A stretch of DNA of 63,291 bases, the filler included, from Octopus bimaculoides (taxonomy: Eukaryota), in the NCBI RefSeq assembly GCF_001194135.2. It is 7 parts of 7 records of this genome, joined end to end, with 100 filler letters (N's around TTAATTAATTAA, not from the genome) between each part and the next. Parts side by side here need not be neighbours in the genome. Positions count along the whole stretch, not along the records: positions 54,604 to 58,938 come from NW_026381496.1; 6 more parts are not named here. One strand, written 5' to 3'. Both the position numbers and the translations under genes were made by a program. Numbering within the stretch: the stretch's first letter is position 1; each line of letters starts with the position of its first letter. Under the pieces are notes generated by a model. It was not told the DNA's origin, did no database searches, and saw only the letters and a list, made by a program, of their open reading frames with translations. Below are positions 56,820 through 58,023 of this stretch, in pieces.

Positions 56820-56888
56820 TTAATATAGTTATAAAAATATATGTGTCTCACTTACGTTGAGAGGATAATTTAAATAAATTATTTTTGA
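56820..56888 (+). pseudogene. trnV: NUMT mt-tRNA-Val(TAC), 5' acceptor strand lost or degraded
   Basis: Anticodon arm TCTCA-CTTACGT-TGAGA, T arm AATTT-AAAT-AAATT, 3' ATTTTTGA. Confidence 0.7.
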
Positions 56889-57021
56889 ATAAATTAAATT
56901 TAAGTATTTATATGGGTGATTATTATAATATATATATATATATAAGTTTTTATAATAAAGTAGTGGGTATGGAAATAATTTTTTAGTTGTACTGAAGAGG
57001 ATAGATATTTGGTTTTAAGTA
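56889..57021 (+). pseudogene. rrnL: NUMT 5' end of mitochondrial 16S rRNA
   Basis: Follows trnV as in the mollusc order rrnS-trnV-rrnL. AATAAAGTAGTGGGTATGGAAAT and GTACTGAAGAGGATAGAT resemble conserved 5'-domain 16S motifs (human AATAAAGTATAGGCGATAGAAAT, GTACCGCAAGGGAAAGAT, from memory). Confidence 0.65.
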
Positions 57022-57132
57022 TACTTCAAAACCCAATAAAATATTTAAAATATGTTTTCATTGAAATATTAATACAAATAATCCACATATATACATATAT
57101 ATTCCTATCAATAAACAATTATTTATAATCAT
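57022..57132 (-). pseudogene. nad4L: NUMT nad4L codons 1-37
   Basis: Invertebrate mitochondrial code: MIMNNCLLMGMYMYMCGLFVLMFQWKHILNILLGFEV. Confidence 0.88.
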
Positions 57133-57138
57133 ATAAAA

Positions 57139-57203
57139 GTTATAATAGTTTAACTAAAACATTGGTTTTGTAAACCAAAATTAAATAATATATTTTTATA
57201 ACT
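57139..57203 (+). pseudogene. trnT: NUMT mt-tRNA-Thr(TGT)
   Basis: Acceptor GTTATAA/TTATAAC, anticodon arm TTGGT-TTTGTAA-ACCAA. Confidence 0.9.
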
Positions 57204-57208
57204 ATATT

Positions 57209-57273
57209 AAGGTTACAAGTGAATCGAACACTTATAATAGGTTTTCAAAACCCATAATTATCCAATATAACCT
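57209..57273 (-). pseudogene. trnS2: NUMT mt-tRNA-Ser(TGA)
   Basis: Acceptor AGGTTAT/GTAACCT, loop TTTGAAA, T arm AAGTG-TTCGATT-CACTT. Confidence 0.9.
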
Positions 57274-57549
57274 AATAATCTAATATGTATATTCACACTA
57301 TATCTAAAATAGGTCGAATTAAAAAACAAACAAAATATATAACCCTAAAAATTCGACCAATCATTTCATATGGATATTCCACAGGACAACTTCCAATCCA
57401 AGTTAAAATAAAAAATACACCTACTAAAAACCAAAAACAAAACTGCCCTAAAAAATTATAACATAACCCTATACACCCTCTAATATGCAAAAAAGGACAA
57501 ATAAATAATACAATAATAGATATACCTAAACTAACCACACCTCCCAATT
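57272..57549 (-). pseudogene. cob: NUMT cytochrome b C-terminal ~92 codons
   Basis: LGGVVSLG...[27 protein letters not shown]...PILDMVWMYMLDY* is open in the mitochondrial code; the TAG overlaps trnS2. Confidence 0.95.
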
Positions 57550-57727
57550 AAGAGTTTTTTCTATATTTTTTTTTTCTGTAGGTATAGTTAGTTTAAATTT
57601 TTATTTAGTTGTTGTTATAGTTGTTTTTGGTGTTTGTGAAGCTACTTTAGGATTATCGTTATTAGTTAGTTTTATTCGACTACATGGAAATGATTACATT
57701 TTAAGATTAAGGGTTTATAAATTGTAG
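57548..57727 (+). pseudogene. nad4L: NUMT nad4L C-terminal 59 codons
   Basis: LSVFSMFFFSVGMVSLNFYLVVVMVVFGVCEATLGLSLLVSFIRLHGNDYILSLSVYKL* (conserved VCEA.LGL and R.HGND motifs). Confidence 0.93.
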
Positions 57728-58023
57728 GTATATTAATGAGAATTATAGTATTATTATTTTTAAATTTTTGATTAAAGTGGGAGTTGCGTTTATGATTTAT
57801 AATAGGTTTTAGGTTTATAAGGTTAAAATATTTAAATGTTGGTTATAGAGGGGTTTGTGAATTTTATTTTTTTTTTGATAAAAGATCAAGGGTTTTGATT
57901 TTGTTAAGGTTTTGGACAAGTAGATTGATATTATTATCTAGTTATAAATCTGTAAAGAGAATAAATAATAAAGTTGGTTTTTTTTCTTTATGTGTATTAT
58001 TATTATGTTTTGTAGTAATTGTA
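57721..58023 (+). pseudogene. nad4: NUMT nad4 N-terminal ~101 codons
   Basis: ATT start with the canonical 7-nt nad4L/nad4 overlap; ...FFFDKSSSVLILLSFWTSSLMLLSSYK... is open until TAA at 58024. Confidence 0.9.

What the first reader, a model, noticed from the sequence alone, without database searches (positions are those of the whole stretch)
56825..58023. Three-piece NUMT with a multi-kb deletion and an in-place inversion that splits nad4L
Seen: piece A (~56825-57021, +) is trnV plus the rrnL 5' end. Piece B (57022-57549) is cob 3', trnS2, trnT and nad4L codons 1-37, inverted. Piece C (57548-58023, +) is nad4L 3' plus nad4 5'. Flipping B restores cob-trnS2-trnT-nad4L-nad4 almost exactly (37+59 nad4L codons, about 2 missing from a typical ~98-aa protein). 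Known: the Octopus/Katharina order on that strand is rrnS-V-rrnL-L-L-nad1-P-nad6-cob-S2-(T)-nad4L-nad4. A and C are therefore collinear, and the rest of rrnL, nad1, nad6 and most of cob are missing. Inference: one break-repair event with template switching or religation of mtDNA fragments.
Basis: partly seen in the sequence, partly recalled or inferred. Interest (0 to 1): 0.75.

Follow-up and report, generated by a model that had tools for sequence, protein, structure and literature searches.

The report
Scrambled mitochondrial DNA insert in octopus nucleus
This is a young, non-functional piece of Octopus bimaculoides mitochondrial DNA pasted into the nuclear genome as several shuffled fragments, one of them flipped; this is an ordinary kind of genomic fossil, and its left edge in the assembly could not be confirmed.

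Summary
The AT-rich block at 56816-58024 is a complex NUMT of Octopus bimaculoides. It is 96-98% identical to that species' own mitogenome (NC_029723). In mtDNA they abut, with only 4 nt lost.

Piece A is shorter than claimed. It runs 56841-57023 and holds the last 48 nt of trnV plus about 132 nt of rrnL.

All internal junctions show 2-3 nt of microhomology. The species' mitogenome has the canonical gene order.

Contigs at nuclear depth from independent individuals span A/B, B/C and C/nuclear, so the NUMT and its inversion are real. No contig or read supports the leftmost 25 nt or its two junctions. A single-copy contig carries the left flank on into an uninterrupted repeat, so that edge may be misassembled.

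Substitutions are synonymous or conservative, so they arose in mitochondria. About two-thirds lie on the NUMT side, which points to a divergent donor haplotype.

Most likely origin: fragments concatenated by end joining during one insertion event. A later in-place inversion is not excluded. This is a known kind of feature, of low interest.

The parts
56781..56816 (.). Left nuclear flank: core of a high-copy interspersed repeat. The unique flank lies further left, 56489-56780.
   Evidence: Word depth is in the thousands, against 12-57 for single-copy DNA. The family consensus continues TCTTGCAAACC... after 56816.
56816..56842 (+). f0: 27-bp mt fragment = mt 6459-6485 (last 6 nt of trnS2, 4-nt spacer, 17 nt of trnT). 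It is an exact inverted copy of 57188-57214. It was NOT confirmed in any reads.
   Evidence: blastn 27/27, E=6e-8. Inverted repeat I1 is 100% complementary. Depth is zero over 56819-56840 in X1, X2, X4, X5 and X8, and no raw reads were laid.
56841..56888 (+). Piece A, part 1: 3' 48 nt of trnV (mt 2210-2257), including the TAC anticodon stem-loop.
   Evidence: blastn. trnV lies at L001 2190-2257 by ARAGORN. Junction view.
56889..57023 (+). Piece A, part 2: first ~132 nt of rrnL (mt 2258-2389). It has a 4-nt (TA)n expansion at 56924-56944 and a 1-nt deletion.
   Evidence: blastn. Differences listed. rrnL identity rests on the Rfam LSU hit at L001 2902-3535 (+) between trnV and trnL, and on an abundant 2148-nt RNA contig.
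57021..57132 (-). Piece B: nad4L codons 1-37 plus the first base of codon 38 (mt 6540-6651), inverted.
   Evidence: blastn, translation, nad4L homologues.
57138..57204 (+). Piece B: trnT(tgt) pseudogene copy.
   Evidence: ARAGORN -mt. Rfam tRNA 33.4 bits.
57209..57281 (-). Piece B: trnS2(tga) pseudogene copy.
   Evidence: ARAGORN. Rfam tRNA 33.1 bits.
57272..57549 (-). Piece B: cob 3' 278 nt (mt 6124-6401), with an open frame through the natural stop.
   Evidence: blastn, translation, codon table.
57547..57727 (+). Piece C: nad4L from the third base of codon 39 to the stop (mt 6656-6836).
   Evidence: blastn, translation.
57721..58024 (+). Piece C: nad4 codons 1-101 (mt 6830-7133). The last ~7 nt match weakly, so the true end is 58017-58024.
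   Evidence: blastn, junction view.
58025..58107 (.). Right nuclear flank. It contains a hairpin-like inverted repeat at 58068-58093 and a high-copy repeat at ~58035-58107. Unique DNA starts at ~58150.
   Evidence: X2 has a 140-nt contig at depth 42.7 spanning 57962-58099. Depth profile. Self-blast.

Best explanation
This is a young, complex NUMT: dead Octopus bimaculoides mitochondrial DNA captured in a nuclear double-strand break and sealed by end joining.

At least three mtDNA fragments were joined. A is the trnV 3' end plus the rrnL 5' end. B is cob 3'-trnS2-trnT-nad4L 5' and was joined in reverse. C is nad4L 3'-nad4 5'. B and C are the two sides of a single break inside nad4L of one mtDNA stretch (mt 6124-7133), with 4 nt trimmed.

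Each internal junction uses 2-3 nt of microhomology. The fragments were most likely concatenated before or during one repair episode. If the 27-bp f0 at the left edge is real, it is filler copied or captured from the same mt region.

The insert has no function. The split nad4L, truncated cob, nad4, rrnL and trnV are pseudogene pieces.

Shown: identity, order and orientation of the pieces; the canonical order of the real mitogenome; nuclear depth and read support for A/B, B/C and C/nuclear.

Inferred: the timing (at insertion) and the repair pathway.
For: -
- B ends at mt 6651 and C starts at mt 6656. Two independent fragments would share a breakpoint this closely with probability of order 1e-3 (inference).
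- Microhomologies are AT, ATA and ATT. In simulated random joins of this AT-rich mtDNA, all three reach >=2 nt in 1.4% of trials.
- The insert is nuclear, not mitochondrial. Exact junction contigs follow nuclear depth while mt depth varies 100-fold:
  - B/C: 56-nt contig at depth 31.4 in X1 and 57.4 in X2.
  - C/nuclear: 140-nt contig at depth 42.7 in X2.
  - mt depth is ~70, ~440 and ~10,000 in X1, X2 and X4.
- Raw 2026 reads carry NUMT-specific alleles in B and C.
- The real mitogenome is canonical.
- Complex numts with non-contiguous pieces in different orientations and 1-7 bp microhomology are documented. They are attributed by consensus to concatenation before or during capture (PMC2820518; PMC6215612).
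- The insert is young. It has no frameshift or stop in any coding part. Of the 21 coding differences, 12 are synonymous and 0 are at codon position 2 (P=2e-4).
Against: - Nothing in the data tells concatenation at insertion from a later inversion of B in place.
- The left edge (flank/f0/A) is unsupported. No contig in five runs covers it, none of 4 sampled junction words occurs in any run of the species, and no raw reads were laid.
- A single-copy-depth contig in four runs continues from 56787-56818 into an uninterrupted repeat.
- The true left end of the insert, and with it the number of pieces, is therefore uncertain.
- Microhomology of 2-3 nt is only modestly unusual in DNA with 76% A+T.
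Confidence: 0.55

Rival explanations
1. Post-insertion in-place inversion, as in the reader's title. The original NUMT was A joined to one contiguous mt 6124-7133 fragment. Later two nuclear breaks, one at the A/B boundary and one inside nad4L, flipped the 528-bp B segment, with 4 nt lost.
For: The B and C breakpoints coincide to within 4 nt, which is the classic two-break inversion signature. This reading needs the fewest mtDNA fragments.
Against: No un-inverted allele appears in any run; no joint of that kind is reported. Sub-kb inversions in a given 1.2-kb locus are rare, and the insert shows no other post-insertion decay. Mixed-orientation fragments are common at insertion (PMC2820518, PMC6215612).
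Confidence: 0.3
2. Replicative template switching (FoSTeS/MMBIR or polymerase-theta-type synthesis). A primer end copied A, jumped to the opposite strand at mt 6651, copied down to 6124, then jumped to 6656 and copied up. The 27-bp f0 is a templated insertion.
For: Every junction has microhomology. f0 is an exact inverted copy of sequence 345 nt away, with microhomology at both ends. Two NUMT-specific changes lie 11-14 nt from the A/B junction.
Against: Template switching gives no reason for B and C to start at the same mt position. A single break does. f0 itself is unconfirmed in reads.
Confidence: 0.1
3. The rearrangement already existed in a minority rearranged mtDNA molecule (a deleted or inverted 'sublimon') that was then transferred whole.
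For: The mt ends of A and B are alike in 11 of 13 nt, ending at the breakpoints (P about 0.03 after allowing for all end pairs). Deleted mtDNAs typically break at such repeats.
Against: The similar ends are joined head-to-head, forming a palindrome, and not as a repeat-mediated deletion. No contig or read at mt depth shows these junctions.
Confidence: 0.05
4. The whole feature is an assembly chimera of organellar reads with nuclear sequence, or a heteroplasmic mtDNA variant, and not nuclear DNA.
For: The assembly is a gapped short-read draft with an N run at 55547-55906. The left junction has no support and has a competing path.
Against: Exact A/B (X1), B/C and C/nuclear contigs occur at nuclear depth in different individuals and studies, plus a nuclear-depth X4 contig ending at the A/B junction, and their depth is independent of mt depth. 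About 28 NUMT-specific alleles, and a SNP inside the NUMT (57992 G>C in X2), are seen at nuclear depth.
Confidence: 0.03

Closest known systems
Complex (multi-fragment) NUMTs formed by NHEJ capture of mtDNA at nuclear double-strand breaks (Hazkani-Covo et al. 2010, PMC2820518; Portugez et al. 2018, PMC6215612)
   Same: It consists of several non-contiguous pieces of the species' own mtDNA in mixed orientation. Inner junctions have 2-3 bp of microhomology. There is no function. It sits next to repeats in AT-rich DNA.
   Different: Two of the fragments are the two sides of one break, with 4 nt lost, so the result mimics an in-place inversion. A possible 27-bp filler duplicates another part of the insert. 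No octopus or cephalopod NUMT study turned up in the paper library.
Multi-fragment mtDNA insertions at induced breaks in yeast (e.g. PMC11372161, listed, not read in detail)
   Same: Short mtDNA fragments are ligated, sometimes several together, into a break by end joining.
   Different: Those are experimental somatic events. This one is a germ-line event that, in the individuals sampled, sits at full diploid depth.
Microhomology-mediated templated insertions / template-switch rearrangements (polymerase theta end joining, FoSTeS/MMBIR). This resemblance is from my own knowledge; none of these papers was read.
   Same: Microhomology occurs at every junction. There is a short exact inverted copy of nearby sequence at one junction.
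   Different: The coincidence of the B and C starts is a break signature, not a switch signature. The candidate templated insertion is unconfirmed in reads.

Membership tests
NUMT (nuclear copy of mitochondrial DNA) | Sequence homologous to the species' own mitogenome | tested here: met
   96-98% identity to NC_029723.1 over 1.19 kb. nad4L is 98% identical to O. bimaculoides nad4L.
NUMT (nuclear copy of mitochondrial DNA) | Physically continuous with nuclear DNA, right side | tested here: met
   X2 has a 140-nt contig spanning 57962-58099 at depth 42.7, close to single-copy depth.
NUMT (nuclear copy of mitochondrial DNA) | Physically continuous with nuclear DNA, left side | tested here: inconclusive
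   No contig covers 56819-56840 in five runs. None of 4 sampled junction words occurs in any run of the species. No raw reads were laid, against an expected ~3. A competing single-copy path exists. Logan contigs can drop minor paths, and the raw runs are sparse proximity-ligation libraries.
NUMT (nuclear copy of mitochondrial DNA) | Copy number follows nuclear, not mitochondrial, depth | tested here: met
   Junction contigs sit at depth 30-31 (X1), 57 (X2) and 12 (X4). mt contigs sit at ~70, ~440 and ~10,000.
NUMT (nuclear copy of mitochondrial DNA) | Arrangement is not that of the functional mitogenome | tested here: met
   L001 has the canonical order. mt reads appear as a 57021<->57547 opposite-strand joint. 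mt contigs continue canonically past each breakpoint.
Complex NUMT (definition in PMC6215612) | Multiple organelle stretches from different locations and orientations in one insertion | tested here: met
   The pieces are mt 2210-2389 (+), 6651-6124 (-) and 6656-7133 (+), plus 6459-6485 (+) in the assembly.
NHEJ / microhomology-mediated end joining product | Inner junctions blunt or with 1-7 bp of microhomology | tested here: met
   Overlaps are AT, ATA and ATT. The chance that all three reach >=2 nt in random joins is 0.014.
Post-insertion in-place inversion | An un-inverted ancestral allele or orthologue exists at the same locus | not testable with these tools
   No sister-species nuclear genome or long reads are available. 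No such joint appears in the runs examined.
Polymerase-theta-type templated insertion | Short insert copied from nearby sequence, flanked by microhomology, and present in real molecules | tested here: inconclusive
   f0 is a 27/27 inverted copy of 57188-57214, but it has no read support.
Heteroplasmic rearranged mtDNA (sublimon) | Junction depth scales with mtDNA depth | tested here: not met
   Junction depth stays at the nuclear level across a 100-fold range of mt depth.

The most novel reading that the evidence does not exclude
The insert may be a snapshot of two things at once. First, it may record a mitochondrial lineage about 2.4% diverged from the reference mitogenome, either a divergent or lost haplogroup or past introgression. 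About two-thirds of the polarisable differences are derived on the NUMT side, yet they carry the mark of purifying selection. Second, it may record a germ-line repair event in a mollusc with a polymerase-theta-like signature: microhomology at every junction plus a 27-bp templated inverted copy.
Probability: 0.2. Interest if true: 0.4.

Novelty: new member of a known kind. Interest (0 to 1): 0.2.

Why it matters
The value is mostly practical.

- This NUMT is 96-98% identical to the real mtDNA and keeps open reading frames. It can therefore contaminate cob, nad4L, nad4 and 16S amplicons, heteroplasmy calls and barcoding in O. bimaculoides.
- It flags a probable local assembly problem at about 56817-56840.
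- As biology it is a clean, datable example of multi-fragment mtDNA capture with a shared breakpoint. It also hints that the donor was a mitochondrial lineage different from the reference one.
- None of this changes what is known about how NUMTs form.

Tried and rejected
- **NUMT inside a repeat copy.** I tested whether the right flank continues the left-flank repeat, which would validate the left junction. Local alignment of the repeat consensus continuation to 58010-58160 scores no better than 44% of shuffles. Rejected.
- **Empty-site allele.** No joint from ~56816 to ~58025 appears in any run. The continuation of the single-copy contig is absent from the piece.
- **Long reads.** No PacBio or Nanopore runs are listed for this species.
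- **Raw 2026 runs.** They turned out to be proximity-ligation libraries with a palindromic linker, sampled at about 1x nuclear depth per run. They confirm NUMT alleles in B and C but are too thin to settle the left junction.
- **Index search with the left-junction sequence alone.** Only unrelated organisms share 1 of 4 words.
- **Similarity between the mt ends of A and B.** It is 11/13, which creates a 10-nt perfect palindrome (AAGTATACTT) at the A/B junction. It is borderline (P about 0.03), so I built no mechanism on it.
- **Heterogeneity of divergence among pieces.** The counts are 7/180, 8/528 and 13/478. My hand chi-square gives p about 0.16, not significant, so there is no evidence that the pieces arrived at different times.
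- **Literature on cephalopod NUMTs.** I found nothing relevant.

Full report
**What is there**

The piece 54604-58938 is nuclear-looking DNA at 30-49% G+C. It carries a nuclear tRNA-Ala and an N gap. Embedded in it is a block at 17-27% G+C, from about 56816 to 58024.

A mitochondrial-mode ARAGORN scan finds trnT(tgt) on the + strand at 57138-57204 and trnS2(tga) on the - strand at 57209-57281. Rfam agrees.

Translation with the invertebrate mitochondrial code gives four readings:
- the cytochrome b C-terminus on the - strand;
- the first 37 residues of nad4L on the - strand;
- the remaining nad4L residues on the + strand;
- the nad4 N-terminus on the + strand.

GC skew flips from +0.3 to -0.4 to +0.7 across the three parts. 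This independently shows that the middle part is inverted.

**Whose mtDNA**

The rejoined 98-aa nad4L hits Octopus bimaculoides nad4L at 98% identity. O. bimaculatus follows at 97% and O. mimus at 93%.

I fetched that species' mitogenome, NC_029723.1, as L001. Its order is M-rrnS-V-rrnL-L-L-nad1-P-nad6-cob-S2-(T)-nad4L-nad4. ARAGORN, the called genes and an Rfam LSU hit at L001 2902-3535 all confirm it.

**Exact anatomy**

| Piece | Window | mt (L001) | Orientation | Identity |
|---|---|---|---|---|
| f0 | 56816-56842 | 6459-6485 | + | 27/27 |
| A | 56841-57023 | 2210-2389 | + | 7 substitutions; a 4-nt TA expansion and a 1-nt deletion |
| B | 57021-57549 | 6651->6124 | inverted | 98.3% |
| C | 57547-58024 | 6656-7133 | + | 97.3% |

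- A starts 20 nt inside trnV, so only the 3' 48 nt of trnV are present.
It is a distinct fragment from the trnS2/trnT boundary, and it is an exact inverted copy of 57188-57214 within B.
- B carries nad4L codons 1-37 plus one base. C starts at the third base of codon 39. Just 4 nt (mt 6652-6655) are missing.
- Between A and the far end of B, 3734 bp of mtDNA are absent: the rest of rrnL, two trnL genes, nad1, trnP, nad6 and 862 nt of cob.
- Adjacent pieces overlap by AT, ATA and ATT. In simulated blunt joins of this mtDNA, 24% have >=2 nt and 10% have >=3 nt of such overlap. All three junctions reach >=2 nt in 1.4% of trials.

**Is it real nuclear DNA?**

Many DNA runs of the species hold 45-61% of the sampled words of the region. 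RNA or mt-only runs hold about 30%.

Laying Logan contigs of independent runs shows two classes.
- Contigs at mitochondrial depth (about 70 in X1, 440 in X2, 10,000 in X4) differ from the window at the sites where L001 differs. They run on past every breakpoint with the canonical mt sequence.
- Contigs at single-copy nuclear depth match the window exactly and span the junctions:
  - B/C: 57520-57575, depth 31.4 in X1 and 57.4 in X2;
  - C/nuclear: 57962-58099, depth 42.7 in X2.

Junction depth follows nuclear depth while mt depth varies 100-fold. That excludes a heteroplasmic rearranged mtDNA and an organellar-read chimera.

Raw reads from three 2026 runs carry NUMT-specific alleles in B and C. 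They also show the true mitochondrial arrangement as a 57021<->57547 opposite-strand joint.

**The left edge is not confirmed**

- No contig covers 56819-56840, which holds f0 and both of its junctions, in X1, X2, X4, X5 or X8.
- No run of the species holds any of the 4 sampled junction words.
- The raw runs gave 0 reads on 56800-56858, against roughly 3 expected from flank depth. The libraries are sparse, chimeric proximity-ligation libraries, so this is weak evidence.
- In X1, X2, X4 and X8 a contig of 709-838 nt at single-copy depth shares 56787-56818. It then continues TCGCAAACCAAATACAAAACCGAATTAAAA, which is an uninterrupted copy of the flanking repeat.
- Logan contigs can lose minor paths. 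But A/B (X1, with a partly laid contig ending at that junction in X4) and B/C (X1, X2) survived, although no B/C contig was found in X4 or X5.

I put the chance that the left join is exactly as assembled at about one in three. Because 56841-56905 is identical to mtDNA, the real left end of piece A cannot be read from contigs. A may extend further into trnV and rrnS.

**Age and source**

There are 28 substitutions over 1186 aligned nt, or 2.4%. In coding parts, 21 differences split as follows:
- 11 at third positions, all synonymous;
- 10 at first positions, of which 9 are V/I/M/L exchanges and 1 is synonymous;
- 0 at second positions;
- no stop codons or frameshifts.

Random mutation would give zero second-position changes with P=2e-4.

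I polarised the differences with the O. vulgaris mitogenome, L002:
- 15 differences are derived on the NUMT side;
- 8 are derived on the reference-mt side;
- 5 cannot be resolved.

The 12 NUMT-side coding changes are themselves 9 synonymous with 0 at position 2 (P=0.006 and P=0.007). So most differences arose in working mitochondria, on both branches.

It follows that the insert has barely decayed and is young. Its donor was a mitochondrial lineage distinct from the reference one. Run X1's own mtDNA shares the NUMT allele at 57055 and 57380, so related haplotypes may still exist.

**Mechanism**

B and C begin within 4 nt of each other in mtDNA. Independent fragments would do this with probability of order 1e-3. 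They are therefore the two sides of one break in one mt 6124-7133 stretch. Three routes fit.

1. Fragments were concatenated, one flipped, before or during capture in a nuclear break by microhomology-assisted end joining. This is the consensus origin of complex numts (PMC2820518; PMC6215612). I give it about 0.55.
2. A contiguous insert was later inverted in place by two breaks. I give it about 0.3. No un-inverted allele was seen, but none could have been excluded.
3. Replicative template switching. I give it about 0.1. It explains f0 and the microhomologies but not the shared B/C breakpoint.

A pre-rearranged donor mtDNA and a whole-feature artefact are unlikely.

One curiosity remains. The mt ends of A and B are alike in 11 of 13 nt, and joined head-to-head they make the palindrome AAGTATACTT at the A/B junction. 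This is borderline (P about 0.03).

**Verdict**

It is wrong in detail for A: trnV is truncated and there is a fourth piece. "In-place inversion" and "deletion" are not demonstrated.

This is a new example of a well-known kind of feature. It matters mainly as a contaminant risk for octopus mtDNA work and as a flag for a doubtful assembly junction.

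Noticed in passing
54954-55027 (-): Nuclear tRNA-Ala(CGC) gene. Rfam tRNA scores 68.8 bits and ARAGORN calls it.
   Followed up: no
55907-55990: A 34-nt inverted repeat, 91% complementary with a 16-nt loop, lies immediately after the N gap. It gives sub-threshold plant-miRNA-family hits on both strands. It looks like a hairpin or MITE-like element at a contig edge.
   Followed up: partly
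56744-56816 and 58035-58107: High-copy interspersed repeats flank the insert on both sides, with word depth in the thousands. The left family's consensus continues TCTTGCAAACCAAATACAAAAACGAAATAA after 56816. RNA contigs also contain both repeats.
   Followed up: partly
56787-56818: In four runs a 709-838-nt contig at single-copy depth shares these 32 nt and then continues as an uninterrupted repeat (TCGCAAACCAAATACAAAACCGAATTAAAA). It could be a paralogous locus, another haplotype, or the true continuation of the left flank.
   Followed up: partly
56657-56714: Contigs at nuclear depth in X1, X2 and X4 skip 56 nt of the left flank, at about the same depth as the window form. There is also a 1-nt insertion after 56713. 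This suggests a second haplotype or a paralogous copy of the flank.
   Followed up: no
57158-57275: A second, more diverged mt-like contig has 10 differences and 1 gap over 119 nt. Its depth is 47 in X1 and 58 in X2, and it is not seen in X4. It probably represents another NUMT of the trnT/trnS2 region elsewhere in the genome.
   Followed up: no
57055, 57380, and mt sequence left of 56841: Run X1's mitochondrial contigs carry the NUMT allele at 57055 and 57380. They also differ from the other runs at two sites just upstream of mt 2210. The species therefore has mt haplotype diversity that partly matches the NUMT.
   Followed up: partly
57992: In X2, the nuclear-depth contig that spans the C/nuclear junction carries a G>C difference. 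This is a polymorphism inside the NUMT itself.
   Followed up: no
57013-57030: The A/B junction sits at the centre of a perfect 10-nt palindrome, AAGTATACTT, within an 18-nt near-palindrome. The palindrome arises because the two joined mt ends are alike in 11 of 13 nt.
   Followed up: yes
58590-58665: By eye, this is a tRNA-like, G+C-rich segment (...GGTTAGAGCAGCGGACTCGCGGTTTCGATTCGCAGACC... on the - strand) flanked by TA/CA microsatellites. It looks like a tRNA-derived SINE head. No tool called it.
   Followed up: no
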